Notes: a model not told the origin generated them from the sequence alone. Positions 23,916 to 61,090 are shown, numbered from the stretch's first letter. The stretch is 64,000 nucleotides of DNA from Phyllobates terribilis (GCF_046119375.1 NW_027362761.1:89218001-89282000); one strand, 5' to 3'. Program-made: numbers and translations.

Positions 23916-23924
23916 AACTTATAT

Positions 23925-33162: not shown

Positions 33163-33164
33163 TC

Positions 33165-33860: not shown

Positions 33861-36510
33861 ATGGGCAAGGTGCATGGCAAGGGACGGGGAAGTGGACGTG
33901 ATGGTGATGGTGCATGCAGAGGCCGAGGACGTGGTCGCGGGCAAGGTGAAATTGTACCACAACAAACACCCACATATTCTTGCTCGACCTTCCTGTCCCA
34001 ATAACTAGGGGACCGCAGAGCACCACTATTGCACACAGAGCAGTGTGAAAAGATTATTGGTTGAATAGCAGATAATGCTTCCAGTCATTTGGCCACCACC
34101 ACCACCACCCTGTCTTCCACACGGTCAAGTCTCAGTAGCCGTGAGTCTGGACCGCATATTCCTCACCCTGATCCTCCATCCTCCCACCATGCCGAGTGCC
34201 CGGAGACAACTGCTCCCACACTTGGACACTCCGAAGAGCTGTTCACTTTTCCATTTATAGATTCGGGCCTCTCACCTGGTCCACTTGAAGTGTGGCAAGA
34301 GGAGATCGCATGTAGAGATGCCCAAATATTGGAGCAGCCACGATCACATGAAGGAAACAGTGGTAAAGTGCAATTACTGTCGCAAGTGGTGGATGAAGAT
34401 GATGAGACACAATTGAAAAAAAGTCTGGAGGAGGACCAGGGTGCAGAAGTGGAAGTCAAGGTGGTGGATTATATAGTAACTGATCCAACCTGGCAGGGGG
34501 ACGCACAGAGCGAGGACAGCAGCACACAGCGGGATGAAGGCGTAGCACCACAACAGACAGGAAGAAGCAGTGTGGTGGCCGTAGACACAAGGCAGGAAAG
34601 TGTTCCTCATAACGCCAACACAAAGGAAGTTGCCAATACAACTGTTAGGTCTTCCCGAGTCTGATTTTTTTTTAAAGACTCTGCAAATAACCCCAAAAAG
34701 GCCATTTGCACCGCCTGCCAGGCCAGGATCAGCAGGTTTAGCAAAACTACCAGTCTGACCACCACCAGCATGATCAGGCACATGGCAGCAAAGCACCCGA
34801 CTAAGTGCGCCGAACCCCAGGGTCCAGGAACAGTGTCTGCGGGTGACACCACTGTTTCCTCCGCTGTTGTGTTTGTACGCCAATCCCCTGCCTATGGCGC
34901 ATGCCAATAAACCTCCTACCCTGCACCTGTTGTTTCACACTCTCAAGTAGCACCATTAACAAGCACGTCCATGTCCTTGTCCCAGCGCAGCGTTCAGTTG
35001 TCCCTATCCCAGTCCTTGGAACTCAAGCGCAAATATGCAGCTAATGCCCCGCAAGCTACACTACTAAATCCACACATTTTGCGAATGCTTGCTCTCGAAA
35101 TGCTGCCTTTTAGGCTCGTGGAGATGGAAGCTTTCCGCAACCTGATGGCGGCAGCTGTCCCTCGGTACTCTTTCCTCAGCCGCCACTATTTCTCCCGGTG
35201 TTCCATCCCTGCATTACACAAGCACGTGTCCCGCAATGTTAGACATGCCCTCAACAACGCAGTAACTGGGAAATCCACCTAACCACGGACATGTGGACAA
35301 GTGCTTGTGGGCAGGGATGGTACATCTCGCTGACGGCACACTGGTTAATATAGTAGAAGCCGGGACCCAGTCGGACCTTGGGACGGAACACGTCCTCACG
35401 AAGCCTAGGATTGCAGGTTGCCCCCACATTCTATAGTTCCTGCACCTTCTCCTCCTCTTCAGCCTCCATCTCCGAAATGACCACATCAGTCGCAAGCTGG
35501 ACTGCAGCACTGCCTCGGCCAACTGGCAACAGGTTGTGCTGATGCTCATATGCTTAGGTGACAAACCACACAAAGCTGAAGAGTTCTTGACAGCTTTGAA
35601 TGACCAGGCAGATCTGTGGCTGACACCGCTGACCCTACAGCTAGGCATGCTCGTGTGTGACAATGGCTGGAATCTGGTGGCTGCCCTGAAGCGAGGAGAG
35701 CTCACACACATACTATGCCATGGTCCATGTGCTTAACTGATCTGCAATGTCCCCATGCATTGTAACTCTACATTGCAGATGTTGGGAAGGATTTGTGAGC
35801 AGAAGAGGGCAGTTGTTGACTACCAGCATCAACAAGGCTGTCGATAACCTCAGGAGTGGACATGGATGTCAGGCATCTGTACCATCCTCCAAAACTTTGA
35901 GGACTCCACCAAGATGGTGAGCGGCGATGACGCCATAATTAGCATTACCATCCCGCTTCTCTGTCTACTGAAACTCTCTCTGCTATGAATTAAAAAGGAT
36001 GCATTGCAGGCAGAGCACGATGAGATGGAGCAAGGAACCATACAGGGTGATTACACACAGCCCAGCCTCATCTCATCCCAACATTGATTGGGTGACAATG
36101 AGGAAGATGAGGAGGAGGTAGAACAGGAGCTAGTTTCCTGTGCTATAGATGGTACAACCTGCACAAATGTCATACCGTCTGTTCAGTGTCGATGGCCTGA
36201 GGACAGGGAGGAGGAGGAAGAGGAGGAGGATGAGAAGGAGAGCATGGTCAGTCGTCCTCTTGGTGAGGACACGGAAGTCTTGCCTATTAGCAGTCTGGAA
36301 CGCTTGGCTGACTTTATGTTATGCTGCCTTACCTGTGACCCTTGCGTTGTCCAAATTTTAGGTGACAATCATTTCTGGTTGGTGACACTTCTAGACCCAT
36401 GCTACAGGGAGAACTTTATGTCTCTTATTCCCTTGCAGGACAGGCCTAATAAAATGGTGCAATACGAGAAGGCCCTTGTTGCAGAATTCTTAACAAAATT
36501 CCTATCTATG
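33861..36510 (+). pseudogene. hAT transposase pseudogene (copy A), C-terminus deleted
   Basis: ATG 33861 MGKVHGKGRG...; BED-finger DNA at ~34640-34800; LEMLPFRLVEMEAF...PSRHYF; VCDNG; multiple stops and frameshifts; after ...KFLS it jumps into 3' subterminal sequence. Confidence 0.9.
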
Positions 36511-38358
36511 AATTTTCCCGAAGAAGATGCCAGGGCCCACCAGAGGAGTCTCCAGATCTCTGGTGGGCTCGTCCAACCCTGCCGAGTAGCAGCCCTGGCT
36601 AAGAAAAGTGTGTGGGAAGGTTCCCAGACACTATATGGCTGATTTTTTCTTAATGTGGATTAGACGTGCTTCATTGCATGTTATTTCTGAAACCGCATTG
36701 CAGATCAGGCCATTGCCCAACTCTGTAGTCGTGAAATTAAAGGGCAAAGACAGATGTTTGTGTGTCGAAGCACCACCTACAAGTACGAGCTGATGTTGGA
36801 CAGGCTGCTGCCATTGCTTATGTGCCAAGCTGCATTAGAAGACTTCCTGAGAGAAATGACAGCTGGAGTAGATATGGTTTCCCAAGTCCTTTCACTGAGC
36901 TAAAAAATATGTCTGGGGTAAGATACAACTCTCACCGACATGCTGTGGACTGGCTCCGTACCGTCCCTGGACACATTCACTTGTCCACGTGTTTGTGGTT
37001 AGGCGGTCTTTCCCATTAAGTGCACTGGGGAGGGCACAGGTAATTTTCTGGGACTCGCACTTATGGAAGGCGGAGACGACACCGGGACAAATAGTGGCGG
37101 CTGGGGACCGAGTATGGACACCCGGCCGCCACTGCCATGAGGTTGTGGACAGCTTCCACGTCCACAAGCCTAAAAGGCCACATTTCAAGTGCAAACAAGC
37201 AGGCCAGAAATGTGTCAGTTTAATATTGCGGCCTTTGGGTGGGTGGGTGGCTCCTTGCATACTTGCGCTTGCATTCCAAGTAACTGAAAACTAAGCATAT
37301 GGTGACCTCTATCATCATCATGGCCTCACCTCGGCACTATGAAATCTTCTGATGGAAGAGCCAGGGCCCTGGCTAAGAAATTTGTTTGGGAAGGTTCCCA
37401 TACACTCTATGGCTGCATTTTTAATGTGTACTGACTCCGTACTGTCCCTGGCCACATTCACTTGTCCACGTGTTTGTGGTTAGGCGGTACTTCCCACCTA
37501 AGTGCACTGGGGAGGGCACGGGTAATGTTGTGGGACCCGTGCTTGTGGAAGGCGGAGACAACACCGGGAGAAATAGTGGCGGCTAGGGACTGAGTATGGA
37601 CACCAGGCTGCCGCTGCCATGAACGCTGCACTTGGACAAGGACTTGGATGGAGATTGCTGCAAGTCTGCAACGACAGGTGCATGGGGGGAGGCATCTTCG
37701 CATTCACCAAGGATTACTTATGATGGGCACACTTTTAGGTAGTGACCTCGGAGTCAGAGATGCATCCAGGGGTCTTCCCCATGCTGTTCCCATGTCTTTT
37801 CAGCACTGTATGCATGTGTCTGATGATGTGTCACACACCAAATGGCCAGATAAGGTTGTAAATTGTTAAAATTACATTTCCCAGTGAATGCATTTGTCTT
37901 GGTTGAAAGCAATGCAAAAATGCATCAAAAACGCTATGTGTGAGCATAGCCCAAGGTGTGGAGGAGCATTTTGCCTTATGTATAAGTCATTTCCCTGGAA
38001 AGGATGTTCTTTAACATTTTTCCCAGGAAAATCCATTTTGGTTTCCTTTTTGCATGTTTTATTGTGAGTCCGTAAAAGTGGCATAATACCTCTGACAACA
38101 TTGTTGACAGCAGTGATCTGGGTGTCCGAAATGATTCCAGGGGTCTTTCCCATGCTGATCTCATCATTTGAGCACTGTTCCCATCGATTTGGACAATTTT
38201 TAGGCCCTCTGCAGACCGCCTGGGGGAGCCACCGGAAAAGTACTCAAGTTTCCCATAGACTTACCCTGGGTTCGTTACTCGGTCCGAGCACTCGATCATT
38301 CCAATTTGCTCGAAGCGAATAACGAGTACCCGAGCATTTTAGTGCTCGCTCATCACTG

Positions 38359-42400: not shown

Positions 42401-43179
42401 TTAGTCACAGAATATAACAAAGCACCTTAGAATTGCAAATTTAAGCGAATCATCCAACAACTATGTGAAACATCCATTATAGTGATGAGCGAGCAAGCTT
42501 GCAACTGCTCGGTGCTCGCCCGAGCATCTCACTACTCAAGATGCTCGGCGCTTGCCGAGTATTTCCGGGGTTGCTCGGCGGGAGCTTGGGTCCCCTCCCT
42601 GCATGTTTGGCACTCTTTAGAGCGCCAATCAACATGAAGGGATTGCCTGCCACTCACTGTAATGCCGTAGCCATGTTGGTTGTGGGCATTACAGTGATTG
42701 GCTGGCCGCACAGCGTCATCAGGTCTATATCAGATCTGGCACCGCCATAATCGTCACAGTCACTCCAGAATTAGACAGTATAGGGAGAGGTGCTGCTTGT
42801 GTATTAGGTAATGTAGGGAGAAAAACCGTACATTACACATATCCATCTTAACAAACAGTCCTTTTGAAAACTAACTAATCCATCTGCAGAGATATCAGGC
42901 AGGCAGTGTATATAGACAGACAGGCAGGGTATATAGCAGACTGCAGTGCATATAGCACAAGAGGCTCCATTCCAATTCTGCCTTCTGCTGCTGTTAGATA
43001 TTTCTATACAAAGGCCCAGGTCTCAGGGGCGAGGAATACTTTTCTTTGGATCTTAATCCTCATTATTTGCTTAAAAAGCAATCCAGAGAGCACAGTTTTT
43101 CTGCACCATTTGCTTGTTGGCACTGCAGAATACAGCCAGGTCCTTTCCATATTATAGCGTTAGAAATCCAACTATTGAA

Positions 43180-43668
43180 AACTGTGTTTTCTCCATCAAA
43201 TGTATCACATATACGTTGTCAGAAAATACTGCCATTTCTGGCCTCCATTAAAAATTTCCTTTAGTGTGTCAATGAAGCAATTCACACCAGTTTGCTTTTC
43301 AAACTACTTACCTACAGGACAGGTATTTAAAACTCTATTTTCTCCGTCACACGGATCACATATACGTTGTCAGAAAATACTGCCATTTTTGGCCTCCATT
43401 AAAATTTTCCTTTAGTGTGTCAGTGAAGCAATTCACACCAGTTTGCTGTTCAAACTACTTACCTACAGACCAGGTATTTAAAACTCTGTTTTCTCCGTCA
43501 CACAGATCACATATACGTTGTCAGAAAATACTGCTATTTCTGGCCTCCATTAAATATTTCCTTTAGTGTGTCAGTGAAGCAATTCACACCAGTTTGCTGT
43601 TCAAACTACTTACCTACAGGCCAGGTATTTAAAACTCTGTTTTCTCCGTCAAACGTATCACATATAAG
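43180..43668. repeat. 151-bp tandem repeat (~3.2 copies) upstream of the copy B ORF
   Basis: ttttctcc recurs at 43187, 43338, 43489, 43640. Confidence 0.9.
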
Positions 43669-43725
43669 TTCGCTCCAAACTCAGTCATTTTTAGTGAGCG
43701 TGGAAGATACTGTCCTCCATATAAA

Positions 43726-46700
43726 ATGGGCGAGGCACATGGCAAGGGAAGGGGAACTGAACGTGATGGTAATGGTGCATGCAGAGGCCGAGGACAAGGC
43801 CGTGGGCAAGCTGAAATTGTGCCACAACAAACACCCACATCTTCTTGCCTGACCTTCCTGTCCCAATATCTAGCGGACTACAGTACACCACAATAGAACC
43901 CAGAGCAGTGTCAAAAGGTTGTTGGTTGGATAGCGGAAAAAGCTTCCAGTCACTTAGCCACCACCACCACCATCACCCTATCTTTAACACGGTCAAGTCT
44001 CAGTAGCCTTGAGTCTGGACCGCATATTCCTCACCTTGATCCTCCTTCCTCCCACCATGCCGAGTGCCCGGAGACAACTGCTCCCTCACTTGGACACTCT
44101 GAAGAGCTTTTCACTTTTTCATTTATAAATTCGGGCCTCTCGCCCGATCCACTTGAAGTGGTGCAAGAGGAGATCGCGTGTAGCGATGTCCAAATATTTG
44201 AGCAGCCACGGTCACACGAAGGCGACGGTGGGAAAGTGTCACAAGAGGTGGGCGATGATGAGACGCAATTGCCAGAAAGTCAGGAGGAGGACCAGGGTGC
44301 GGAAATGGAAGACAAGGTGGTGGATGATATAGTAACTGACCTAACCTGGCAGGAGGACATGCAGAGCTAGGACAGCAGCACACAGGGGGAGGGAGGCAGA
44401 GCACCCCAACAGGCAGGAAGAAGCTGTGTGGTGGCCGCAGACAGAAGGCAGGCAACCGTTTCCCACAACACCAACACAAAGGATGTTGCGAGTACAACTG
44501 TTAGGTCTTCTCGAGTCTGGTTGTTTTTTTATTAACTCTGACGATAAACCCAAAAATTCCATTTGCACCACCTGCCACGCCAGCATCAGCAGGGGTGGCA
44601 AAACGACCAGCCTGACCACCACCAGCATGATCAGGCACATGGCAGCAAAGCACCCGACTCTGTGAGCTGTACCCCAAGGTCCAGGAACAGTGTCTGCAGG
44701 TGGCACCATTGCTTCTTCCACTGTTGTGCATGCAAGCCAATCCACTGTCCATGGTGCATGCGAAGATGCCTCCTGCCCGGCACCTGTCATTGCGCACTCT
44801 CAAGTAGCTGCATCAGGAAGCACGTCCATGTCCTTGTCCCAGTGAAGCGTTCAGTTGTCCATACCCCAGTCCTTGGAATGCAAGCGCAAATATGCAGCCA
44901 AGGCTCCACAGGGCACACTACTAAATTCTCACATTTTACGACTTCTTGAGCTCAAAATGTTGCATTTTAGGCTCGTGGAGATGGAAGCATTCCACAACCT
45001 GATGGTGGCGGCCGTCCCTTGGTACTCGATCCCCAGCCGCCACTATTTCTCCCGGTGTGCTGTCCCCGCATTACACAAGCACGTGTCCCAAAACATTAGC
45101 CGTGCCCTCAACAACGCAGTTACCTGGAAAGTCCACCTTCCCACGGACACGGGGACAAGTGCTTGTAGGCAGGGACAGTACATCTCGCTGATGGCACACT
45201 GGGTTAACATAGTGGAAGCTGGGACCCAGTCGGACCTTGGGATGGAATATGTCCTTCTGACGCCAAGGATTGCGGGCCCTAGGTCAATCAGGTTTGCCCC
45301 CACGGTCTACAGCTCCTGCACCTCATCCTCCTCAGCCACCTCCTTCTCTTCAGCCTCCAGCTCTGAAATGACCACATCAGTCACAAGCTGAAAGCACTGC
45401 AGCACTGCCTCGGCCAAGCGGAAACAGGCTGTGCTGAAGATAATATGCTTAGGTGACAAACCGCACAATACTATAGAGTTGTGGACAGCTCTGAAAGAGC
45501 AGGCAGATCTGTGGCTCACACCGCTGTAACTACAGCCAGGCATGGTCATGTGTGACAATGGAGGGAAACTAGTGGCGGCTCTGAGGCGAGGCGAGCTCAC
45601 ACATGTACCATGCCTAGCCCATGTGTTTAACCTCGTGGCTCAGCGGTTTCTCAAATCCAACCCAGAGGTGCCGGATGTGCTTGTTAAAGTACACTGCCTG
45701 TATTCCCATTTTAGAAAGTCAGCTACAGCTTCCGCCGCCCTTGCAGTGGTTCAGCAGCGTTTGCAGCTTCTTGCTCACAGACTGGTATGTGATGTCCCCA
45801 CGCGTTGGAACTCTACACTGCAGATGTTGGGAAGGATTTGTGAGCAGAAGAGGGCAGTTGTTGAGTGCCAACATCAACAAGGGCATCGGTATTCAGTTCA
45901 GACTCCACATATAAGACCTCAGGAGTGGACATGGATGTCAGACATATGTACCATCCTCCAAAACTTTGAGGACTGCACCAAGATGGTGAGCGGCGATTAT
46001 GCCATAATTAGTGTCACCATCTCGCTTCTCTGTCTTCTGAAACGCTCTCTGCTCACAATCAAAGAGGATGCATCGCAGGCGGAGCACGATGAGAAGGAGC
46101 AAGGAACCATACAGGGTGATTACACACAGCCAAGCCTCATCTCATCCCAACGTGGATTGGGTGACAATGAGGAAGAGGAGGAGGAGGAAGGACAGGAGCT
46201 AGTTTCATGCACTATAGACGGTACTGCCTGCACAGCTGTCATACCGTCTGTTCAGCGTGGATGGCCAGAGGACAGAGAGGAGGAGGAGGAGAGCATGGTC
46301 AGTCATCCTCTTGGTGAGGACACAGGAGTCTAGCCTGTTAGCAGTCTGGCACACATGGCTGAGTTTATGTTAAGCTGCCTTTCCCATGACCTCCGCGTTC
46401 TCAAAATTTTGGGTGACAGTCATTACTGATTGGTGCTACTTCTAGACCCACGCTACATGGAGAACTTTATATCTCATATTCCTGAGGCGGACAGGTCTAC
46501 AAAAATGGGGCTGTACCAGAAGGCCCTTGTTGTGGAACTATTAAAAAAATTCCCATCTGAAAACGCTGGCGGCAGAGGGCACACTTCGTTGGACAACCAA
46601 GGAGTACAGGCGAGAGAGACACAACTCCAATCCAGCAGAGGCATGGGAACACTGTCAAAGTTCTGGGAGAGTTTTCTCAGACCCTCCCATTGCACAGGCC

Positions 46701-47036
46701 CTGAGGCACGGGGTACTCTCACAAGGAGTGCAAAGGTTTGGAAGATGCTGAGAGAGTACCTTGCCTACTGTACCAACGTCCTCTGTCTCTTTTAATTATT
46801 GGGTATCCAAGCTGGATACGTGGAATGAAGTGGCTCTCTATGCATTGGAGGTCCTGGCCTGCCCTGCCGCCAGCATTTTATCAGAGCGGGTTTTTAGTGC
46901 CACTGGTGGAATTTTAACTGATAAGCGCATCCGCCTGTCAACTCAAAATGCTGACAGGCTGACTCTTATAAAAATGTACAAGGGCTGGATTGGGCCAGGC
47001 TTCTCAACACCACCGAATAATAGCAGCGTAACTTAA
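43726..47036 (+). pseudogene. hAT transposase pseudogene (copy B)
   Basis: MGEAHGKGRG start; BED finger (ICTTCHAS...TTSMIRHMAAKHP); VMCDNG; HVPCLAHVFNL; PTRWNST; SERVFSATGG...PPNNSSVT*; several stops and frameshifts. Confidence 0.93.
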
Positions 47037-47460
47037 ACTCAAATCTAGTGTCTTTTCTTGGGAGGTGTTTTCCCATGCACCTTTTCACACCCACACATGG
47101 GTCTACGCTTCCTGATTTTGGCTATTTGCTCTTGTCCTCTTCCATCTCCTCATCCTTCACCACCATATAACCAGGGTGACCGTGGTCCGTGATGCAACAC
47201 CCACATAATTTTTTTAATGCAGTTTATAATGCCCGTAAAAAAAAAAATTTATACAGTATGTTCATGTATACCCCCCAGGGGTAAATGTTTGTCAGCCCAT
47301 ACACTTAGTGCATGGGCATTACAAGTATAGGAGGCCCGCTCCTTTCTAATGGAAACATTTTTTTATGAGGCCCTCCTCCATATCTCTTCCAAGGAGCATT
47401 GAAGTTCTTCCAAATTTTTGGCAGGCCTTGCATTCACTGCATAGGCCAACACTATGGGAG

Positions 47461-47950
47461 ACTCTCTCCTTTCTAATGGAAATTTGTCGCTACTGTGGCC
47501 CTGCTCTATGTGTCTTTAAATTCTAAATGAGGTTTTTCCTAAAATTGTTCAACCTTTGGACTCACTGCATACCCTATAACTGTGTAGCAGACTCTCTCCT
47601 TTCTTATGGAAATTTGTCATTACTGTGGCCCTGCTCTATGTGTCTTTAAATTCTTAGTGGGGTTTTTCCTAAAATTGGTCAGCCTTTGGGCTCACTGCAT
47701 ACCCTATAACTGTATAGCAGACTGTTTCCTTTCTAATGGGAATTTGTCGTTACTGTGGCCCTGCACTATGTGTGTTTAAATTCTTAGTGGGGTTTTTCCT
47801 AAAGTTGGTCAGCCTTTGGACTCACTGCATACCCTATAACTGTATAGTAGACTCTCTCCTTTCTAATGGAAATTTGTCATTATTCTGGCCCTGCTCTATG
47901 TGTCTTTAAATTCTTAGTGGGGTTTTTCCTATAATTGGTCAGCCATTGGA
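47461..47950. repeat. 130-bp tandem repeat (~3.8 copies) downstream of the copy B ORF
   Basis: Unit starts at 47461, 47591, 47721, 47851. Confidence 0.9.
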
Positions 47951-50900
47951 CCCTCCTCTTTTCAAAGGGGTATTGGGTTGCGTCCAAATTTTTGGCAGCC
48001 GCTCGCATGAGGTTATGAAAAGCTTTCTCCTCCACGAGCCTAAAAGGCCATATTTCAAGTGAAAGCAGCATTAGAGGACTTCCTGTGAGAAATGACTGCT
48101 GGGTAGAAATGGTTTCCCAAGTCCTTTCACCAAGCTAAAGAATATGGCTGTGGTTAAATACAACTCAGCAAAAAAAGCTGTGGACTGGCTCTGTACCGTA
48201 CCTGGCCACATTCACCTGTCCACGTGTTTGTGGTTAGGCGGTCCTTCCCAGTAAGTGCACTGGGGAGGGCACAGGTAATGTTGTGGGACCCGTGCTTGTT
48301 GAAGGCGGAGACGACACCGGAAGAAACAGTGGCGGCGGGGGACCGAGTATGGACACCCGGCCACCGCCGGCATGAGGTTATGAAAAGCTTCCGCCTCCAC
48401 AAGCCTAAAAGGCCACATTTCAAGTGCAAGCAGCTGTAAAAAAATTGGCAGTATAGTATTTCAGCCTGTGGGTGGGTGGCTGGCTGCATACTTGCACTTG
48501 CATTCCAAGGAATCGGGTAGGGACAACTAAACGCTGCACTGGGACAAGGACATGGACGGTGATTATTGCAAGTCTGCAATGACAGGTGCATGGCGGGAGG
48601 CATCTTCGCATGCGTCAAGGATCACTTACGATGGGCACACTTTTAGGCAGTGACCTGGGAGTCAGAAATGCTTCCAGAGGTCTTCCCCATGCTGTTCCCA
48701 TGTCTTTTCAGCACTGTATGCATGTGTCTGATGATGTGTCACACAGCACATGGCCAGATAAGGTTGTAAAATGTTAAAATGACATTTCCTGGTGAATGCT
48801 TTTGTCATGGTTGAAAGCAATGCAAAAGTAAAAAAATGCATGAAAAAATGCTACGTGTGAACATAGCCCAAGGTGTGGAGGAGTATTTTTGGTTTTGGTT
48901 ATTTATTTTGCCTTATATACAAGTCATTACCCTGGTAAGGATGTTCCTTAATGTATTTCCCAGGAAAATCCATTCTGGATTGTTTTTGTATGTTTTATTG
49001 TGAGTCCATAAAAGTGGCGTAATACTCTGACAACGTTGTTGACAGCAGTGACCTGGGAGTCAGAAATGCTTGCAGGGTCTTCCCCATGCTGTTCCCATGT
49101 CATTTGAGCACTGTTCCCATCGATTTGGGCAATCTTTAGGCCCTCTGCAGACCGCCAGGGACGGCCGCCTGAAAAATGCTCGAGTTTCCCATAGACTTAC
49201 ATTGGGCTCGTTGCTGAGGTCGAGTACCCGAGTATTCCAATTTGCTCAACCCGAGCAACGAGTACCCGAGCAATTTATTGCTCGCTCATCACTAATTCAT
49301 TACAATTAATGAGAAATGAGCAGAGGAACAATCTATATAACCATATAAAGTACAAAAAAAGAAAACACTATAAATATATATTGTGTCATTGATGCTGCAT
49401 ATAATTTAATGAAAAAACATGCCACCCTTCCTATAGTTTATACCTTTAGGTTGCTTTGTATCCAATTTGATTAGCCAAAATAATTTATTCAAAAAAAATT
49501 TTTTTTACTGCCATCTACCTCATCTTTTTGGGGATTTAACCCTATCATAACAAAAAAAAAAAAAAACAATTAGTGTTTCCATTATGTTTATAAAATCTGT
49601 TTCACAGCAGCTAATAAATTATATTCTTCCTTGCAAGATTATAAAGATGTTCTGCAATTTTTTTTATTTTTGACTAGCACAACCCACGTATTTCACAATA
49701 CAAATATTACAATCAATGCAATATATTATGTGATGTGCACGCATTTAATAAAATAATTTCTATGAGAAAACATAAATGTTATTTATTTATTTATTTATTT
49801 TTGCAAATTGACACATATTGCCCATATTTCGTGAAAATTAAAAATTATCCTTCAATGAAAGCCAAATAGTATTTTTATACAATTTTTATACATACTTTGA
49901 GACAATGTGTTGCCTAAAGAGCAACCTCTTCTTGCACATGTCTGCATCCATTCTCTAGAATTTTATTAAAGATGTCATCTTGATATAAAACTGAAACTTA
50001 TCTGGAGATTATAATTCTGACCTTATTAAATTGAAGGCTATATGGGTTACTGAATCTTAAAAGATTAATTATTAGTTGAAAAGGAGGTTCTGTTTATATC
50101 CTTTTCGGTTTTTCTTTCCATTGATAATGCACTTTCTCTAGTTATACTTAGCATTTTTTAATATGATTTATCAATTACGGTATATAGTGTTTGTATCCTC
50201 TCATTTTTAGTCTATCCTTGATGATTAAATTTTCATCAAAAAAGTTTTTTTCTTCAGAGCAAATACATTTTGCCCTGGTGAATTCCTTACAAGTCATAGA
50301 TTCAGTGCTCCGATGGGATCGTGAAATTCCCCTTCATTAGCTATCATGTCTCTTGGTGGGAAGAGTGTTTTATTTTTTCCCAATTTAATCCTTTCTGCTC
50401 AAGCATAATCTGGAATGGTCGTTAAGCGGATGATATTTTTATCTTTTGGTTTAGCAACACCATGATCATCCTAGATTTTGTTCAATACATAAACCACAAT
50501 AATGTTAATGTAAGATTTACATTCACATGTTCTAAAATTAAAATGAAATTTTTTTACTTTCTGCTGACTGGTAATCCTGTATCTACATTAATAAGATCCA
50601 ATGCTCTATTTTTCTGAAACCTATCTGTGGCAACACCACATTTTCTGCTGACAGTTGTAATACCATGAACACTATCACATCTATCTCTTATGGAGAATTC
50701 AAAGTCAAACACAACCAAAAAAATTACTATAATTTACACTTGAAAGTAAGAAATTATAGTTCACATGTATGTCAGCCCAAGAGATAAGCATAATTTATCA
50801 AGAGGCATGTGCATTGGTCAAGTGTCATTATGTCATATTGTTGCTTTGGTAATTTAACCCCAAATTATAGTTGAATAGTGCATATTTGTTAATTTTTTTG

Positions 50901-53003: not shown

Positions 53004-55447
53004 TAGTGTTGAGCGAGCACTAAAATGCTCGGGTGCTCGAAGCTCGGGCCGAGATCACCGTGATACTCGGGTGCTCGACCCGAGCAACGAGCCCAATGTT
53101 AGTCTATGGGAGACTCGAGCATTTTTGCGGCGGCACCCCCGGCAGTCTTTTAAAAGCCTAACAAGTGCCCAAAACGATAGTGACAGTGCTCAAATGACAT
53201 GGGGACAGCATGGTTCAAAAACGAAAGTGAAACTTTTTTCCTGTGAAATATGTTAAAGAAGTTCCTTTTCAGGGAAAATAAATCACCCAAAAGAAAAATA
53301 CTCCTCCACACCTTCAGCTATGTTCACAAGTAGCATTTTTTATGCATTTTTGCACTTTTGTATTGCTTTCAACTATGACAAATACATTGACCGGGAAATG
53401 TCATTTTAACATTTTACAACCTTATCTGGCCATGTGCTGTGTGACACATGCATAAAGTGCTGAAAAGACATGGGAACAGCATGGGGAAGACCCCTGGAAG
53501 CATCTCTGACTCCCAGGTCACTGTCTAAAAGTGTGCCCATCATAAGTGATCCTTGCCGCATCAGAAGATGCAGACTTGCAACTATCCCCATGCAAGTTCT
53601 AGTCCCAGGGCAGTGTTCAATTGTACCTCCCCCATTCCTTGCAACGCAAGGGCAAGTATGCAGCCTGCCACCCACCCACCCCCAGGCTGCAATACCATAC
53701 TGCTTGCTTGCTTGAACTTGAAATTGGGCCTTTTAGGCATGTGGAGGCGGAATCTGGCCACCACGTCATGGCTGTGTTGGCGGCCTGGTATCCATACTCA
53801 GTCCCCAGCCGCCCGGCGGCTGGGTGTCCTTACTCGGTCCCCAGCCGACCCGCGGCCGGTGTCCACACTCGGTCCCCAGCCGCCTGGGGGCAGCCGGGTG
53901 TCCATAAACGGTCCCCAGCCGCCCCTATTTCTCCTTGGAACATCCCCCCACACACTTTTCTTAGCCCAGCCTGCTTTAGGCAGCATTGGACGAGCCCACC
54001 AGAGAACCAGACTCCTCCAGTGGGCCCTGATTTCTCCATCGGTGGAGTTGAGAGTGCCAAGGTGAGGAGCATGATGATGATGACAGAAGTTAGCATCTGC
54101 TATGTTTTCTTTTAATGCAAGTGTAAGTGTGCAGCCTGCCACCCACCCACCCCCAGATTGCAATTCCATACTGCTAGCTTGCACTTGAAATGGGGTCTTT
54201 TAGTTTGGAGAAGGCCGAAGCTGGCCACTACCTCATGGCTGCGTCGGCAGCGAGGTATCCATACTCAGTCCCCAGCCGCCCCTATTTGTCCTGGTGTGCC
54301 TTATACATAAGATTAAGCGCGTATACCAAAACATTACATGTGCCCTACCCAGTGCATTTAGTGGGATGGAGAGCATATTCGGCTGTAGTGTGTGCATGCC
54401 AAACCCCTGTTCATGGTACATGCGAAGATGCCTCCCACCTTGCACCTGTCGTTGCAGACTTGCAACTATCCCCATTCAAGTCCTTGTCCCAGGGCAGTGT
54501 TCAATTGTACCTCTCCCATTCCTTGCAATGCAAGCGCAAGTATGCAGCCTGCCACCCACCCACCCCCAGGCTGCAATACCATACTGCTTGCTTGCTTGCA
54601 CTTTAAATTGGGCCTTTTAGGCATGTGGAGGCAGAATCTGGCCACCACGCCATGGCTGTGTCGGCGGCCTGGTATCCATACTCAGTCCCCAGCCGCCTGG
54701 TGGCCGGGTGTCCCCGCTTGCTCCCCAGCCTCCAGGGGGTGGCCGGGTGTCCATACTCGGTCCCCAGCCACCCCTATTTGTCCCGGTAACCTTTCCCACA
54801 CTTTTCTTAGCCTGGCCTGCTTTAGGGCAGCATTGGCCGAGCCCAACGGACTATCAGATTCCTCCGGTGGGCCCTGGCTTCTCCATCAGGGGAGTTGAGA
54901 GTGCCAAGGTGAGGAGCATGATGAGGATGATAGAAGTTAGCATCTGCTTTGTTTTGTTGTAATGCAAGCGCATGTATGTAGTAGCGTCTAGGCCTGAGGT
55001 GGTCAGCGTTTTGGCGCATATCCTACCTCCTCCGAGGATTGCTGGATGTTTTCCTGCTACTATCCAAGTTCTATGACTCCCGTTAAAACAAAGCTTCAGG
55101 TGATAAATGATGGATGAGGTAGTGGCAAAGGAGAAAGAGCAGTAGGAACAGGGACCATTCACATCAATATCAGGCCAGTCAACCAGATATGTCTTGTAGG
55201 ATATGTTTCTGTAACAAAAGGAGCGGTTCGGCTACACAGTTATAGGGCATACAGTGAGTGCAATGCCTACCAATAATTTCGAGGCACTCCAATGCCCCTT
55301 GGAAATGACATGGAGGTCAGAGGGCGTTAACTAAACCTTTTTTTCCATTTATAGCAACTGGGTCTCCTGTGCACTAATGGCCTAAGCAGTGAATGGAAGG
55401 CTTTCCAAAAATTATGAGGAACTGCAATGCCCCTTACAAGAGCCATG

Positions 55448-56473
55448 TGTGGCACCCCAGTGGTCTGTTCACCACAGTAATAGAGATATTATGTCGGAGA
55501 GCAAGTGGGAGGTTTCTTGGTCAGGATCCCTTAAACATGCAACATCCTCCTGCCCCAGTCCTGGGAGGGGAGAATTCTGCCCTTATAAACTGGATCTGGG
55601 GCGGGGTTGAGTGAGTCAGAGAACAGAGAACAGTCAGAGTCAGAGTGAGAGCAAGGGAAAGTAACAGCAAGGAGCTCTGTAGGAGCTAGGAGCTAAAGAC
55701 CAGGGGCTGGAAGCTGAGCAGAGCTCGCCCTGGCTGAAGACAATAGGAACCGGACACAGGAGTCCAAGGCTGTTAGGACTTATATATCCAGCAGCAGAAA
55801 CCAGCCGGCAGGGGATTTCAGGTCCTCTGGCCATAGAAGCCCAGAGGGTCAGTCACAAGCAAGAGACCAGCACCGCCGTTGTGGAGTGGAGGCTAACAGA
55901 AGGCCCCAAGTCACCAGCCATACGGGTGAGCACTACACGGTACACTCAGGGACGTGGCTACTTCTACCCGCTTACAGCAAGGTAGCCAAGAAGAGTGCAG
56001 ACAGATGGGGAGACCTACAACTCCACCTGGCCAGGGGAACTCCTGCTTGCTCACAGACTGACCAGGCCTCTTATGCTAGCCAGTGCTCCCGGGAGGGTCT
56101 ACCTTATAATCATCAGTAAAGACCCTGAACTGCACTGCAAAGACTCTGAGTCGTTCCTGCTGCGCTCGTGCACCATCACCCCCATCATCCACACTCACTG
56201 CCCTGAGGCTATACTCCTCCCGTGGGGAGTTATCCCATTCTCTGCTGCGCACACAACACCAGCCTCAGCGGTCTGCCTCGCAGCGGTGGTACTCCCTATC
56301 CGCAATCCATGGGTGGCGCAGTCGGACAATTAACCTCAAAACCTAAGAAAGACTGCCACTGGTTTGACCAGCCTGAGCCACGGGACCGGGTAACCGCCAC
56401 GGAGACTACAGACCCCAGAGACCCGGCACCGGGTATCCCACACACGTGTACACACGGCCCAGGGGGCGCATCA
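55448..56473 (+). mobile_element. Solo Gypsy-type LTR, 1026 bp
   Basis: TGTGGCACCCC...GGGGCGCATCA; 4-bp TSD CATG (55444-55447, 56474-56477); TATA-like cttataaa ~55586; uninterrupted paralogous site agagccATGcagtac at ~56603-56617. Confidence 0.9.
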
Positions 56474-56870
56474 CATGCAGTACAGCATATTACAAACATA
56501 AGTCCCATTATTTGAGGAGTGGGTCTCCCATAGTATTTGCTTATGCTTTCCAAGCAAAAGCTGCCAAAAATTAGGACAGAGCAACTTGCAATGCCCCTTA
56601 CAAGAGCCATGCAGTACAGCATATTATAAACATAAGTCCCATTATTGGGGAGTGGGTGTCCCATTGTATTTGCTTATGCCTTGCAAGCAAAAGCTGCTAA
56701 AAATAAGGACGGAGGAACTTGCAATGCTGGCACCCTGGTGGTATAGTGGTGGTGGAGGCTGAGGATAAGGAGAAGAAGATAAAACAGCCGAAACGAGGAA
56801 GCGTATACCCATGTGTGGTTGTGAAGCGGTGTATATGAATACACCTCCCGAAATAACACAGTGGATTTGA

Positions 56871-59291
56871 CTATGTTACTCTGCTGTCATTTGGTGGTGA
56901 TGAGAAGTCTGGCCCAATCCAGCCCTTGTTCATTTTGATAAGGGTCAGCTTGTCAGCATTGTCAGTTGACAGGCGAGTGCGCTTATCAGTTATAATTCCC
57001 CCAGCGGCACTAAAAACACGCTCCGATAACACGCTAGCGGCAGGGCTGGACAGGACCTCCAAGGTGTACAGAGCGAGTTCATTCCAAGTGTCCAGCTTGG
57101 ATATCCAATAATTAAAAGGCACAGAGGAATCACGGATGATGCTGGTACGGTCGGCAAGGTACTCCCTCACCATCTTTTGAAAATTTCCACTCCTTGTGAG
57201 AGTACCCCGCACCTCAGGGCCTGTAAGCTGGGCGGGTGTCAGAAAACTGTCCCAGAACGTTGACAGTGTTCCCCTGCCTCTGCTGGATTGGAGTTGCATC
57301 TCTCTCGCCTGTATGCCTTGGTTGGGCAACGAACTGTGACCTCTGCCGCTAGCGTGTTCAGATGGGAAATTTTTTAAGAGTTCTGCAGCAAGGGCCTTCT
57401 GGTACTGCCCCATTTTTGTAGACCTCTCCACCTCAGGAATAAGAGAGTGAAAGTTCTCCTTGTAGCGGGGGTCTACAAGTGTCACCAACCAGTAATGACT
57501 GTCACCCAACATTTTGACAACGCAAGGGTCACGGTTAAGGCAGCGTAACATAAAGTCAGCCATGCATGCCAGACTGGTAACGGGCAAGATTTCTGTGTCC
57601 TCACCAAGATGACGACTGACCATGCTCTCCTCCTCCTCTTCCTCCTCTCCCCTGTCCTCAGGACACCCACGCTGAACCGACGATATGACACTTGTACAGG
57701 TACTACCGTCTACAACGCATGATAGCAGCTCCTGTTCTTCCTTCTCCTCCTCCTCTCCCTCATTGTCCCCCAATGCACGTTGGGATGAGATGAGGCTGGG
57801 CTGTGTGTAATCGCCCGCTACGGCTTCTTGATCCATCTCATCATACTCTGGCTGCAATGACTCCTCTTTAATTCTCTGCAGAGAGCGTTGCAAAAGACAG
57901 ACAAGTGGGATGCTGACACTAATGATGGCGTCATCGCCACTCACCATCTTGGTGGCCTCCTCAAAGTTTGTCAGGATGGTACATATGTCAGACATCCAGG
58001 TCCACTCCTGAGGTCTTATGTGTGGAGTCTGACCTGAATATCGACGGCCTAGTTGCAGCTGGTACTCCACAACTGCTCTCTTCTGCTCACAAATCCTTTG
58101 CAACATGTGGAGGGTAGAGTTCCAACGTGTGGGGACATCACACACCAGTCGGTGTGCCGGAAGCTGCAAACGCTGCTGCAACACAGCAAGGTCGGCGGAA
58201 GCTGTAGCCGACTTGCAAAAATGAGCTGACAGGCGGCGTACTTTCACGAGCAGATCTGGCAACTCGGGGTACGATTTAAGAAACCGCTGAACCACGAGGT
58301 TAAGCACATGAGCAAGGCATGGTACGTGTGTGATCTCACCTCGCCTCAGAGCCGCCACCTGGTTACGGCCATTGTCACACACGACCATGCCGGGATGTAG
58401 GTTCAGCGGTATCAGCCACAGATCTGCCTGCTCTTTCACAGCTGTCCACAACTCACAAGCAGTGTGAAGTTTATCACCTAAGCTTATGAGTTTCAGCACA
58501 GCCTGTTGCCGCTTGGCGGAGGCAGTACTGCAATGCTTCCAGCTTGTAACTGATGTGGTGATATCTGAGATGGCGGCTGAACATGAGGAGGAGGAGGAGG
58601 AGGAGGATGCGCAGGAGCTGTACACTGTGGGGGCAACTCTGACTGACATAGGGCCCACAATCCTCGGTGTGGGGAGGATGTGTTCCGTCCCAAGGTCCGA
58701 CTGGGTCCCGGCTTCCACTATGTTTACCCAGTGTGCCGTCAGAGAGATGTACCGTCCCTGGCCACAAGCACTTGTCCACGTGTCCATTGTCAGGTGGACT
58801 CTCCCAGTAACTGATTTGTTGAGGGCACGGCAGATGTTTTGGGACACGTGCTTGTGTAGTGCGGGGATGGCACACCGGGCAAAATAGTGTCGGCTGGGGA
58901 CCGAGTACCGAGAGACGGCCACCGCCATAAGATTGCGGAAGGATTCCGTCTCCACCAGCCTAAAAAGCAGCATTTCCAATGCAAGCAGTCGTGAAATGTG
59001 CGAATTTAGGACTGTGGCCTGTGGGGCGTTAGCTGCGAATTTCCGCTTTCGTTCAAAGGTCTGGGATATGGACAATTGAACACTGCGGTGGGACGTGGAC
59101 GTGGACGTTGATGCTGTTTCTTGAGAAACTGCCATAACAAGTGAAGACTGAGAGGAGGGGGCATCTTTACATGCAGTATGGACAGGGGATTGCCTTGCGC
59201 ACACAACAGGGGGTTCTTTGCATGCACAACAGTGGAAGAAGCAGTGGTGACACCCGCTGACACTGGTCGTGGACCCTGGGTTTCGCCCCAC
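56871..59291 (-). CDS. hAT transposase catalytic portion, 806-aa open frame
   Basis: Hermes-like motifs all present: LTMDTWTS (D), VVCDNG (D), CLAH (CxxH), PTRWNST, SVLSERVFSAAG (E) and the C-terminal dimerisation region. Confidence 0.9.
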   Translation of the reverse strand: MGRNPGSTTSVSGCHHCFFHCCACKEPPVVCARQSPVHTACKDAPSSQSSLVMAVSQETASTSTSTSHRSVQLSISQTFERKRKFAANAPQATVLNSHISRLLALEMLLFRLVETESFRNLMAVAVSRYSVPSRHYFARCAIPALHKHVSQNICRALNKSVTGRVHLTMDTWTSACGQGRYISLTAHWVNIVEAGTQSDLGTEHILPTPRIVGPMSVRVAPTVYSSCASSSSSSSSCSAAISDITTSVTSWKHCSTASAKRQQAVLKLISLGDKLHTACELWTAVKEQADLWLIPLNLHPGMVVCDNGRNQVAALRRGEITHVPCLAHVLNLVVQRFLKSYPELPDLLVKVRRLSAHFCKSATASADLAVLQQRLQLPAHRLVCDVPTRWNSTLHMLQRICEQKRAVVEYQLQLGRRYSGQTPHIRPQEWTWMSDICTILTNFEEATKMVSGDDAIISVSIPLVCLLQRSLQRIKEESLQPEYDEMDQEAVAGDYTQPSLISSQRALGDNEGEEEEKEEQELLSCVVDGSTCTSVISSVQRGCPEDRGEEEEEEESMVSRHLGEDTEILPVTSLACMADFMLRCLNRDPCVVKMLGDSHYWLVTLVDPRYKENFHSLIPEVERSTKMGQYQKALAAELLKNFPSEHASGRGHSSLPNQGIQAREMQLQSSRGRGTLSTFWDSFLTPAQLTGPEVRGTLTRSGNFQKMVREYLADRTSIIRDSSVPFNYWISKLDTWNELALYTLEVLSSPAASVLSERVFSAAGGIITDKRTRLSTDNADKLTLIKMNKGWIGPDFSSPPNDSRVT

Positions 59292-60229
59292 AAAGTCGGG
59301 TGCTTTGCTGCCATGTGCCTGATCATGCTGGTGGTGGTCAGGCTGGTAGTTTTGTCACCCCTGCTGATGCTGGCATGGCAGGTGGAACATATGGCCTTTT
59401 TGGGGTTATCAGCAGAGTCTTTAAAAAAATTCCAGACTCTGGAAGACCTACCGCTGGTACTGACAACGTCCCTCGTGTTGGTGTTACGGGGAACGGTTGC
59501 CTGCCTTCTGTCTGCGGCCACCACACTGCTTCTTCCTGCCTGTTGGGGTACTCTGCCTCCCTCCCCCTGTGTGCAGCTGGCCTCACTCTGCATGTCCTCC
59601 TTCCACGTTGGGTTAGTTACTAGATCATCCACCACCTCCTGCTCTTCCACTTGCGCACCACGATCCTCCTCCTCACTTCCTGACAATTGTGTCTCATCAT
59701 CGTCCACCTCTTGTGACAGATTGCCAACGTCGACTTCCTGTGGCCGTGGCTGTTCAAATATTTGGGCATCGTAACATGGGATCTTCTCTTCCACCACTTC
59801 AAGCGTATCATGCGAGGGGCCCAAATATGGAAATGGACCAGTGAACAGCTCTTCAGAGTGTCCAAGTGTGGGAACACTTGCTGTCTGACGACACTCGGCA
59901 TGGTGGGAGAAAGGAGCATCAGGGTGAGGAGGAGTATGTGTTCGAGACTCATGGCTACTAAGAGTTGACCGTGTGGAAGACAGACCGGAGGTGGTGGTGC
60001 CCAAGTAACTGGAAGTATTATCTGCTATCCAATTAATAACCTGTTCACACTGATCAGTTCTCAATACTGGTGTTGTTCTGTGCTTCCCTAGTAATTCGAT
60101 CAAGAAGTGGGAGCGAGAAGATGTGGCTGTTGGTTGTGGCACATTTTCACCTTGGCCACGGCCCCGTCCTCTGCACGAACCATCACCAGAACGTGCACTT
60201 CCACGTCCCTTGCCACACGCCTTGCCCAT
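59006..60229 (-). CDS. hAT transposase N-terminal portion with BED zinc finger (407-aa frame, frameshifted to the catalytic frame)
   Basis: RG-rich start, acidic region, VWNFF...AICSTC...SMIRHMAAKHP; frame lost at a 23-nt duplication near 59200-59230. Confidence 0.88.
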   Translation of the reverse strand: MGKACGKGRGSARSGDGSCRGRGRGQGENVPQPTATSSRSHFLIELLGKHRTTPVLRTDQCEQVINWIADNTSSYLGTTTSGLSSTRSTLSSHESRTHTPPHPDAPFSHHAECRQTASVPTLGHSEELFTGPFPYLGPSHDTLEVVEEKIPCYDAQIFEQPRPQEVDVGNLSQEVDDDETQLSGSEEEDRGAQVEEQEVVDDLVTNPTWKEDMQSEASCTQGEGGRVPQQAGRSSVVAADRRQATVPRNTNTRDVVSTSGRSSRVWNFFKDSADNPKKAICSTCHASISRGDKTTSLTTTSMIRHMAAKHPTLWGETQGPRPVSAGVTTASSTVVHAKNPLLCAQGNPLSILHVKMPPPLSLHLLWQFLKKQHQRPRPRPTAVFNCPYPRPLNESGNSQLTPHRPQS

Positions 60230-60310
60230 TGTAAATGAAGTAAAATAGCTTAAACTTGCACTATCAATGGAAAAAGGGTAATAAAGAGTAGATTAGAACC
60301 GTGGAAGAGG

Positions 60311-61090
60311 AAAACCACAGTTATTGTTTACTGGGGTATACCACACTTTTTTTAAATAGATATTTGCTGTTGAACAGTGGACGACACACTCAAACTGCTT
60401 TTTTTCAGATACCAAAGGCCCAAAACTGGATAGTACAGCGATTTGACCCGTGGAACAGCGAAAACACACTGGGATGTCGGGCCTACACAAGACTATTTTC
60501 AACAGATATATTTTTGTGTCACAACAGTCAGGAGACACTGCTGTTATTCTTTTAGGAAAAAACTACCAAAAGCTGAATAATAGAGATTTTTTACCGTGGG
60601 ATGGCAAAACCACAGTTATTGTTTACTGGGGTATACCACACTTTTTTAAATAGAGATATGTGCGGCTGAACAGTGAGCGACACACTCAAACTGCTTTTTT
60701 CTTAGATACCAAAGGCCCAAAACTGGATAGTACAGCGATTTGACCCGTGGAACTGCGAAACTACACTGGGATATCGGGCCTACACAAGACTATTTTCAAC
60801 AGATATATTTTTGTGTCACAACAGTCAGGAGACACTACTGTTTTTCTTTACGGAAAATATACCAAAACCTGAATAATAGAGATTTTTTACTGTGGGATGG
60901 CAAAACCACAGTTATTGTTTACTGGGGTATACCACACTTTTTTAAATAGAGATATTTGCGGCTGAACAGTGAGCGACACACTCACACTGTTTTTTTATAT
61001 ACAAATGGCCCAAAATGGATAATACAGAGGTTTGAACCGTGGAAGTGCAAAACAACACTTCTGTTTCTCTAGCATACACCAGACTATTTT
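60311..61090. repeat. ~295-bp tandem repeat (~2.7 copies) upstream of the copy C ORF
   Basis: aaaaccacagttattg at 60311, 60606, 60902. Confidence 0.9.

What the first reader, a model, noticed from the sequence alone, without database searches (positions are those of the whole stretch)
44755..48612. hAT family with a built-in antisense module: inverted copies of its own transposase CDS downstream of the ORF in all three copies
Seen: in copy B, ~48170-48612 is the reverse complement of ~430 bp of the transposase CDS (44755-45185, from just after the BED finger through the first catalytic Asp region), with a 22-nt perfect match (44823-44844 vs 48537-48558); a second partial unit lies at ~47990-48070. 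Copy A has two such units (~36890-37270, ~37440-37710) and copy C three (~53560-53940, ~54115-54370, ~54417-54800), always antisense to that element's ORF. The junction with the 3' subterminal sequence (aagtgtgcccatc-taagt-atccttg followed by the agatgc of the CDS copy) is at the same point in A, B and C, so the module is ancestral to the family and not a one-off rearrangement. Established: inverted duplications of transposon sequence can yield hairpin RNA and silence the family (maize Mu killer). Inference: read-through or 3'-end antisense transcripts would give dsRNA/siRNA against the transposase, making this a self-limiting DNA transposon that carries its own silencer.
Basis: partly seen in the sequence, partly recalled or inferred. 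Interest (0 to 1): 0.8.

Follow-up and report, generated by a model that had tools for sequence, protein, structure and literature searches.

The report
Frog hAT transposon with inverted CDS relic
A very abundant frog "cut-and-paste" transposon family really does carry backwards copies of a piece of its own transposase gene near its 3' end, but these copies look like an old, neutrally decaying rearrangement rather than a working self-silencing device.

Summary
Three copies of one BED-finger hAT transposon lie in the window: A about 24984-38358 (+), B 42480-49294 (+), C 53004-61766 (-). Each carries 1.2 to 3 tandem units between the ORF and the 3' subterminal region. Each unit is an inverted copy of about 430 bp of the element's own CDS. 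All three copies share the same junction with the 3' subterminal sequence, and the units share derived changes, so one old event is ancestral to all three.

In a DNA run of the same species, Logan contigs give the module the same summed depth as the CDS (ratio 1.0). That fits family-wide fixation in a very high-copy family.

The "built-in silencer" reading is not supported:
- The arms are only 64-76% complementary today.
- They were at most about 82% alike in the common ancestor of the three copies.
- The units evolve neutrally (omega about 1 in every frame) and show no within-copy homogenisation with the CDS.
- The transposase diverged under purifying selection (omega 0.44-0.51), so active lineages carried the module and still amplified massively.
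- The most intact copy, C, has the weakest complementarity.

No stranded or small-RNA data could be tested. First-stage readers of this scan flagged the same layout in at least eight other windows of this genome; none has been followed up.

The best reading is a fixed, neutrally drifting relic of an inverted partial duplication. A weak antisense small-RNA role is not excluded.

The parts
42480..49294 (+). hAT copy B, complete ends, 6815 bp. The TIRs are TAGTGATGAGCGAGCA at 42480-42495 and 49279-49294. The TSD is ATCCATTA / ATTCATTA (7 of 8).
43720..47040 (+). Copy B transposase CDS remnant. It is broken by frameshifts and stops into ORFs 44563-44949, 44855-45391, 45542-46333 and 46430-46795.
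44748..45182 (+). Copy B source segment of the CDS, from after the BED finger to the first catalytic Asp block. This is the segment that is copied in inverted form.
47459..47951 (.). Copy B 130-bp tandem repeat (3.8 copies) between the CDS and the module.
47994..48070 (-). Copy B partial second inverted unit.
48063..48621 (-). Copy B main inverted unit. 48192-48621 is the reverse complement of CDS 44748-45182 (74%). 48063-48191 is the non-CDS spacer part of the unit, shared with copy A.
48622..49294 (+). Copy B 3' subterminal region and TIR. CCGAGCA-type subterminal motifs cluster in the last 200 bp. It contains an internal duplication of about 70 bp (48647-48717 and 49045-49114).
24984..38358 (+). 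hAT copy A. The 5' TIR and the first ~65 bp are missing. A 7.3-kb 31-bp minisatellite (25423-32749) sits in the 5' non-coding part. The CDS remnant is 33843-36507 and lacks its C-terminal part. The 3' TIR is at 38343-38358.
34890..35330 (+). Copy A source segment of the CDS.
36827..37280 (-). Copy A inverted unit 1, on the CDS-proximal side.
37425..37710 (-). Copy A inverted unit 2 (partial), abutting the 3' subterminal region at the shared junction.
53004..61766 (-). hAT copy C, complete, 8763 bp, with a perfect 8-bp TSD (AGAGAGAC on the + strand). The transposase lies in two overlapping ORFs, 60229..59006 (407 aa, zf-BED) and 59291..56871 (806 aa, hAT dimerisation domain), which implies one frameshift.
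58745..59215 (-). Copy C source segment of the CDS.
53569..54113 (+). Copy C inverted unit 1, next to the 3' subterminal region. It has a 24-bp deletion at the junction and an internal 36-bp micro-duplication.
54114..54418 (+). Copy C inverted unit 2 (partial).
54419..54978 (+). Copy C inverted unit 3, 91% identical to unit 1.

Best explanation
The module is a relic of one old inverted partial duplication of about 430-470 bp of the transposase CDS. It was inserted directly upstream of the 3' subterminal region of a master element of this frog hAT family. The likely cause (inferred) is template switching during gap repair or another aberrant transposition event. The duplication became fixed in the lineage, then behaved like the element's other internal tandem repeats, gaining and losing units by slippage or unequal exchange. 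Since then it has drifted neutrally as non-coding 3' sequence. It does not now act as an effective hairpin silencer, and it did not prevent the family from staying active and reaching a very high copy number. Shown here: the structure, its single origin, neutral evolution of the units, purifying selection on the CDS of module-bearing lineages, and abundance equal to the CDS. Inferred: the mechanism of origin and the lack of function.
For: Single origin: the junction is the same in A, B and C. The units share derived states against all three CDS copies, for example CCACCCACCC, GGGTGTCCATACTC and CCCCAGTGCACTTA. Old origin: the Fitch-optimistic identity between the ancestral CDS and the ancestral unit is at most 82.4%, with 71 fixed differences in 404 columns. 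Neutral units: omega is 0.84-1.4 in every frame, including the long open alternative frame. Unit identity between copies (84-89% A-B; the C units differ by more than the CDS synonymous distance) is no higher than elsewhere in the element. No co-evolution of arms: the units of A are closer to the CDS of B than to the CDS of A. Active carriers: whole-CDS omega is 0.44 (B vs C, 784 codons) and 0.51 (A vs C) in the true frame, against 1.1-1.2 off-frame. Abundance: DNA run X1 laid 357,036 contigs at 80% likeness or more, and the summed depth of the module bins 48188-48561 (mean about 2.09 M) equals the mean of the CDS bins (about 2.07 M). Weak hairpin: Watson-Crick pairing is 73% in B, 74% in A and 64-65% in C; the longest perfect helices are 22 nt in B (18 is the next longest), 25 nt in A (unit 2) and 15 nt in C. 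No cis-site role: the subterminal CCGAGCA-type motifs are confined to the terminal 200 bp and absent from the module. Tandem dynamics: unit number is 2, 1.2 and 3, and B's single unit aligns with A's unit 1 on one side and A's unit 2 on the other. Relatives in Dendropsophus, Leptodactylus and an ENA contig (48-57% aa identity) lack any inverted CDS piece.
Against: The arms can still form a long imperfect duplex in silico: net cofold energy -227 kcal/mol against -19 for shuffles, with 341 of 435 positions paired. There is no AATAAA or ATTAAA between the stop codon and the 3' TIR in B, and only one in C, so sense transcripts may run through the module. Contigs from runs guessed to be RNA libraries cover the module at about 0.3-0.6 of the CDS level, and one contig joins CDS position 45741 to 48120 at the module. 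Long retention of the module in active lineages could also mean it is useful. piRNA targeting tolerates mismatches. Only three copies were read base by base, and genome-wide fixation rests on coarse contig depth.
Confidence: 0.6

Rival explanations
1. This is the reader's reading: a built-in silencer. Read-through transcripts fold the module back onto the 5' CDS, or pair in trans with other copies' mRNA. The dsRNA is diced into siRNAs, or antisense piRNAs are made from the 3' UTR, and these lower transposase expression, making the family self-limiting.
For: The inverted geometry is fixed in the family. There is no canonical poly(A) signal upstream of the module in B. RNA-library contigs cover the module. 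An imperfect duplex is thermodynamically favoured. There is precedent that inverted duplications of transposase sequence silence MuDR (PMC3440606) and the hAT element Ac (bioRxiv 10.1101/2020.01.07.897926).
Against: The arms were at most 82% alike already in the ancestor of the copies and pair at 64-76% now, with few helices of 18 bp or more. No selection keeps the arms complementary. The family amplified to a very high copy number while carrying the module, and its transposase stayed under purifying selection. The known silencers are near-perfect, one-off loci, not family-wide features. From established population genetics (my own knowledge, not checked here), self-restraint is hard to select for in a transposon. 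No strand or small-RNA evidence is available.
Confidence: 0.13
2. The module has a cis function unrelated to RNA silencing. Possibilities are a spacer or structural DNA needed for 3' end recognition, extra transposase-binding sites, or a 3' UTR element that affects mRNA stability or export.
For: The module is retained in all three copies at a fixed position next to the 3' subterminal region. One block, TACTC.GTCCCCAGCCGCC, is well conserved between the units and the CDS and is micro-duplicated in C. It contains TACTCGG, a 7-mer that also occurs in the subterminal regions.
Against: The main subterminal motifs are absent from the module. The TACTCGG occurrences are homologous positions in repeated units, so they amount to a single independent occurrence. 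Unit number and sequence vary freely (64-89% identity; 1.2-3 units). Related hAT elements lack the module.
Confidence: 0.08
3. The pattern is an artefact or a local one-off: a mis-assembly, or a rearrangement private to this locus and copied by segmental duplication.
For: The three copies lie within 37 kb of each other.
Against: The copies differ by 16-20% and have different flanks and TSDs. One is in the opposite orientation. Module depth in an independent DNA run equals CDS depth over hundreds of thousands of contigs.
Confidence: 0.01

Closest known systems
Mu killer (maize), an inverted partial duplication of mudrA (PMC3440606)
   Same: Both contain an inverted partial copy of the transposase gene, and both could give a hairpin RNA if transcribed through.
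   Different: Mu killer is a single rearranged locus with near-perfect arms that include a TIR. It is transcribed from a flanking gene and is a proven siRNA source and heritable silencer. Here the inverted piece sits inside every element examined, the arms are only 64-76% alike, and neither silencing nor small RNAs have been shown.
Ac/Ds composite insertions made by alternative transposition (bioRxiv 10.1101/2020.01.07.897926)
   Same: Both are in the hAT superfamily. Inverted duplications of element sequence arise from aberrant transposition, which is a plausible kind of origin for the module.
   Different: Those are new, locus-specific, perfect inverted repeats that silence Ac. They are not transmitted as part of a transposing family.
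Tol2 internal inverted repeats (IIRs) (bioRxiv 10.64898/2026.01.12.699174, citing Izsvak 1999)
   Same: Tol2 is a vertebrate hAT element with a family-wide internal inverted repeat of about 300 bp that is compatible with full activity.
   Different: The Tol2 IIRs are two adjacent arms in an intron, derived from an Angel MITE insertion rather than from the transposase CDS. Here one arm is the CDS itself and the other lies about 3 kb downstream as a tandem array.
Bacterial IS antisense regulators: IS10 RNA-OUT (own knowledge) and IS200 art200 (PMC4513863)
   Same: They are the only well-documented cases of element-encoded antisense RNA that limits the element's own transposase.
   Different: They are short cis-antisense RNAs transcribed opposite the 5' UTR with perfect complementarity, in a prokaryotic setting. 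They are not a duplicated inverted CDS fragment.
Internally rearranged Ds-type derivatives from abortive gap repair or template switching (own knowledge, not checked here)
   Same: Filler DNA and inverted internal segments copied from the same element arise during repair after hAT excision.
   Different: Those are usually private to individual defective copies. Here the rearranged form is the one that propagated.

Membership tests
hAT superfamily DNA transposon | 8-bp target site duplication | tested here: met
   Copy C has AGAGAGAC on both sides (8 of 8). Copy B has ATCCATTA / ATTCATTA (7 of 8).
hAT superfamily DNA transposon | Short terminal inverted repeats starting (T/C)AG.G | tested here: met
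   TAGTGATGAGCGAGCA occurs at both ends of B (0 mismatches) and of C (1-2 mismatches) and at the 3' end of A. There were 8 matches in the window against 0.33 expected.
hAT superfamily DNA transposon | Transposase with a BED zinc finger, an RNase-H-like core and a C-terminal hAT dimerisation domain | tested here: met
   Pfam zf-BED at 4e-9 and Dimer_Tnp_hAT at 2e-8. Homologues are anuran 'ZBED4/6-like' proteins carrying PF02892, PF27039 and PF05699.
Mu killer-type hairpin silencer | Inverted duplication of transposase sequence | tested here: met
   437 bp at 74.8%, E = 1e-74.
Mu killer-type hairpin silencer | Near-perfect long dsRNA arms suitable for dicing | tested here: not met
   Watson-Crick pairing is 64-76%, with indels. 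The longest perfect helices are 15-25 nt. The ancestral arms were at most 82% alike.
Mu killer-type hairpin silencer | Both arms transcribed in one RNA | tested here: inconclusive
   Contigs from runs guessed to be RNA cover both arms, and one joins the CDS to the module. However, they are unstranded, family-level and possibly DNA-derived. There is no canonical poly(A) signal before the module in B.
Mu killer-type hairpin silencer | Small RNAs from the arms and reduced transposase RNA or activity | not testable with these tools
   Small-RNA reads are shorter than the 31-mer index, and the single read-laying run was used on contigs.
Tol2-type internal inverted repeat | Two adjacent inverted arms derived from a MITE inside an intron | tested here: not met
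   One arm is coding sequence and the other is a 3' tandem array about 3 kb away. No TIR or MITE ends lie at the unit borders.

The most novel reading that the evidence does not exclude
This hAT family would be a eukaryotic DNA transposon that carries its own antisense trigger. Every transcribed copy would deliver antisense-CDS sequence in its 3' UTR, feeding piRNA or siRNA production against the family's transposase. The element would thereby tune its own activity, or the host would exploit it, which would help such elements coexist with a giant frog genome.
Probability: 0.1. Interest if true: 0.8.

Novelty: new variant of a known kind. Interest (0 to 1): 0.38.

Why it matters
If the module were functional, it would be the first family-wide, element-borne antisense regulator known in a eukaryotic DNA transposon. 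It would also be a test case for the theory of transposon self-restraint in giant amphibian genomes.

As the evidence stands, the finding matters in two more modest ways:
- It shows that a hAT lineage can acquire a 430-bp inverted copy of its own coding sequence, keep transposing and amplify enormously. Such a hairpin-prone architecture is therefore not lethal to a transposon in a frog germline.
- It is a practical warning for annotation. The module produces spurious antisense "transposase" hits and open reading frames of 120-170 codons that are not under coding constraint.

Tried and rejected
- **Units as a coding gene.** The long ORFs in the units (122-170 aa, same alternative frame in A, B and C) do not look coding. 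Omega is about 1 in all frames, several frames are open at once in this GC-rich sequence, and a protein search with the 154-aa ORF found nothing.
- **Foldback or long-TIR structure.** Only the 17-bp TIR matches between the 5' and 3' ends.
- **Nested self-insertion.** The unit borders lie inside the CDS and no TIR sits at either border.
- **Transposase-binding array.** The subterminal motifs are absent from the module.
- **Significance of the 22-nt perfect match.** It is not significant (P about 0.16).
- **Closer family members from other frog genomes.** Anomaloglossus and Ranitomeya imitator loci returned no DNA because the files are too large. Only more distant relatives could be read, and they lack the module.
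- **Literature.** Searches found no description of a eukaryotic DNA-transposon family with a fixed inverted CDS-derived module. The searches were limited to the held library.
- **Earlier scan notes.** They are first-reader titles only, none followed up.
Full report
**What is there**

The window holds three diverged copies of one DNA transposon family. A 16-bp terminal motif, TAGTGATGAGCGAGCA, occurs at 42480 (+) and 49294 (-), at 53004 (+) and 61766 (-), and at 38358 (-). There were 8 matches with up to 3 mismatches against 0.33 expected.

- **Copy B** (42480-49294, + strand, 6815 bp) has perfect TIRs and the flanks ATCCATTA / ATTCATTA.
- **Copy C** (53004-61766, - strand, 8763 bp) has a perfect 8-bp duplication, AGAGAGAC.
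- **Copy A** ends at 38358. Its 5' part is recognisable from 24984 but lacks the first ~65 bp, including the TIR. It contains a 7.3-kb 31-bp minisatellite.

Copy C encodes the transposase in two overlapping ORFs, implying a single frameshift. The 407-aa ORF has a BED finger and the 806-aa ORF has the hAT dimerisation domain. The nearest database proteins are anuran "ZBED4/6-like" hAT transposases, 66% identical at best. The host is therefore a frog. Earlier notes of this scan place other findings more than 800 Mb further along the same sequence, so its chromosomes are very large.

**The observation**

BLAST of copy B against the window gives 44756-45182 vs 48613-48192 in inverted orientation, 74.8% over 437 bp. 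With sensitive settings the E-value is 1e-74.

- The 22-nt perfect match is exact but unremarkable at this identity (P about 0.16).
- A partial second unit lies at 47994-48070.
- Copy A has two units (36827-37280 and 37425-37710). Copy C has three (53569-54113, 54114-54418 and 54419-54978).
- All units are antisense to their element's ORF.
- The copied segment runs from just after the BED finger to the HLTMDTWTS block.
- The junction of the last unit with the 3' subterminal sequence is the same in A, B and C. An internal unit of C instead continues into CDS-like sequence at that point.
- In the alignment of all units with the three CDS segments, the units share many derived states against all CDS copies. 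The units are therefore one clade from one event that predates the split of A, B and C.
- The spacers between units are also homologous between A and C.

**How widespread it is**

Logan contigs of a DNA run of the same species laid 357,036 pieces on 43700-49294 at 80% likeness or more, so this is a very high-copy family. The summed depth over the module bins (48188-48561, about 2.09 M) equals the mean over the 17 CDS bins (about 2.07 M). This measure is coarse, because summed contig depth is not a copy number. It does fit the module being present in about as many copies as the CDS.

Runs from other, coded species hold about 20% of the exact 31-mers of the B locus, including the module. Close relatives therefore share it.

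More distant relatives show no inverted CDS piece. These are from Dendropsophus, Leptodactylus and an ENA contig, at 48-57% protein identity. The module is therefore specific to this family, not a general trait of frog hAT elements.

First-stage readers flagged the same layout in at least eight other windows of this genome. These are unchecked leads, not evidence.

**How it evolves**

- **Age.** The units are 71-76% identical to the CDS segments in A and B, and about 65% in C where the alignment is reliable. Taking at each column the most favourable parsimony state, the ancestral CDS and the ancestral unit of the three copies differ at 71 of 404 columns or more. They were thus at most 82% alike. 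The duplication is much older than the split of the copies.
- **No constraint on the units.** Nei-Gojobori omega is about 1 in all three frames (0.84-1.4 in the long open alternative frame), so the 120-170-codon ORFs in the units are not coding.
- **No concerted evolution.** The units of A are closer to the CDS of B than to the CDS of A. Nothing keeps the arms of one copy complementary.
- **Active carriers.** The transposase core shows omega 0.44 (B vs C, 784 codons) and 0.51 (A vs C) in the true frame, against 1.1-1.2 in the other frames. Much of the divergence among A, B and C therefore accumulated in active, selected lineages, and all of them carried the module.

**Hairpin potential**

As RNA, the two arms of B would pair at 73% Watson-Crick (76% with G:U), with 23 gap columns. 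The longest perfect helices are 22, 18, 15 and 14 nt. The net cofold energy is -227 kcal/mol against -19 for shuffles.

In A pairing is about 74%. In C, the only copy with a nearly intact ORF, it is 64-65%, with no perfect helix above 15 nt.

The sense direction has no AATAAA or ATTAAA between the stop codon and the 3' TIR in B, and only one in C. Read-through into the module is therefore plausible.

Contigs from runs guessed to be RNA cover the module at roughly 0.3-0.6 of the CDS level. One contig joins 45741 to 48120, which is a deletion derivative. These contigs are unstranded, family-level and may include DNA, so they show presence, not a hairpin transcript.

**Other ideas tested**

- The 5' and 3' ends share only the 17-bp TIR, so this is not a foldback element.
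- The unit borders lie inside the CDS without TIRs, so it is not a simple nested insertion.
- The subterminal CCGAGCA-type motifs cluster in the terminal 200 bp and are absent from the module, so it is not a binding-site array.
- Unit number (2, 1.2 and 3) and the mosaic alignment of B's unit with A's two units show ordinary tandem-repeat dynamics. The element's other internal arrays behave the same way: periods of 151 bp, 130 bp, 133 bp (121-bp offset by BLAST) and 296 bp.

**Interpretation**

The best-supported reading (confidence about 0.6) has these steps:
1. One old inverted partial duplication of CDS occurred. By inference it arose from template switching or aberrant transposition, events known in hAT elements (bioRxiv 10.1101/2020.01.07.897926, and my own knowledge of abortive gap repair).
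2. It was fixed in a master lineage.
3. It became a small tandem array.
4. It has drifted neutrally ever since.

The family's success with the module in place argues that it is not an effective self-silencer. So do the high divergence of the arms already in the ancestor and the lack of any selection for complementarity.

A residual role as a source of mismatched antisense small RNAs, piRNAs in particular, cannot be excluded without small-RNA data (about 0.1-0.15). A cis role in transposition or mRNA handling is possible but unsupported (about 0.08).

**Comparison with what is known**

- Mu killer (PMC3440606) and the Ac composite insertions share the inverted-transposase geometry. They are one-off loci with near-perfect arms and proven siRNAs.
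- The Tol2 internal inverted repeats are family-wide and compatible with activity, but they derive from a MITE in an intron (bioRxiv 10.64898/2026.01.12.699174).

I found no description of a eukaryotic DNA-transposon family with a fixed, CDS-derived inverted array, within the limits of four library searches. I therefore rate it a new structural variant of a known kind of element. Interest is moderate and would rise sharply only if small-RNA data showed the module to be a trigger.

Noticed in passing
window 2814-9769 and 25423-32749: Two arrays of about 7 kb each (about 230-240 copies) of the same 31-bp minisatellite, ATCCTGGTATGCATGGCACCCCTCATCCCCA, with strong negative GC skew. The second lies inside the 5' non-coding part of hAT copy A, where copies B and C have 151-bp and 296-bp tandem repeats instead.
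   Followed up: partly
window 23916-24249 and 38359-38550: The same 33-bp satellite (..ATGCCAACCTGATGTACTCTACAC..) lies on both sides of copy A, so A probably inserted into a satellite array. About 720 bp of unrelated sequence (24255-24975) replaces A's 5' terminus.
   Followed up: partly
window 2203-2218 (-), 12275-12290 (+); L001 3692-4848; L002 8953-10297: A second hAT-like terminal motif, TAGAGATGAGCGAACC, occurs here. In Dendropsophus (L001) it forms short MITE-like pairs of about 230 bp, and in Leptodactylus (L002) the related motif TAGAGATGAGCGAGTA forms a pair about 190 bp apart (8953/9141). A related non-autonomous family is therefore shared across neobatrachian frogs.
   Followed up: no
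window 52565-52903 and 61795-62403: LINE-type reverse-transcriptase ORF fragments flank copy C on both sides.
   Followed up: no
window 54980-56470: Copy C has about 1.5 kb between the module and the CDS end with almost no counterpart in A or B. It may be an insertion or lineage-specific sequence and was not identified.
   Followed up: partly
window 45134/46543, 45741/48120 and 48675/49081 (joints): Contigs from other family members skip 1408, 2378 and about 405 bp of copy B. The first two joints occur only in the runs guessed to be RNA and look like internal-deletion derivatives. The third matches recombination between B's direct repeats at 48647-48717 and 49045-49114.
   Followed up: no
L001 10001-13210 (Dendropsophus ebraccatus): The annotated 'ZBED6-like' gene fuses leucine-rich-repeat exons to a hAT transposase, and a second LRR gene lies 8 kb downstream. 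This is either a chimeric gene model or exon capture.
   Followed up: no
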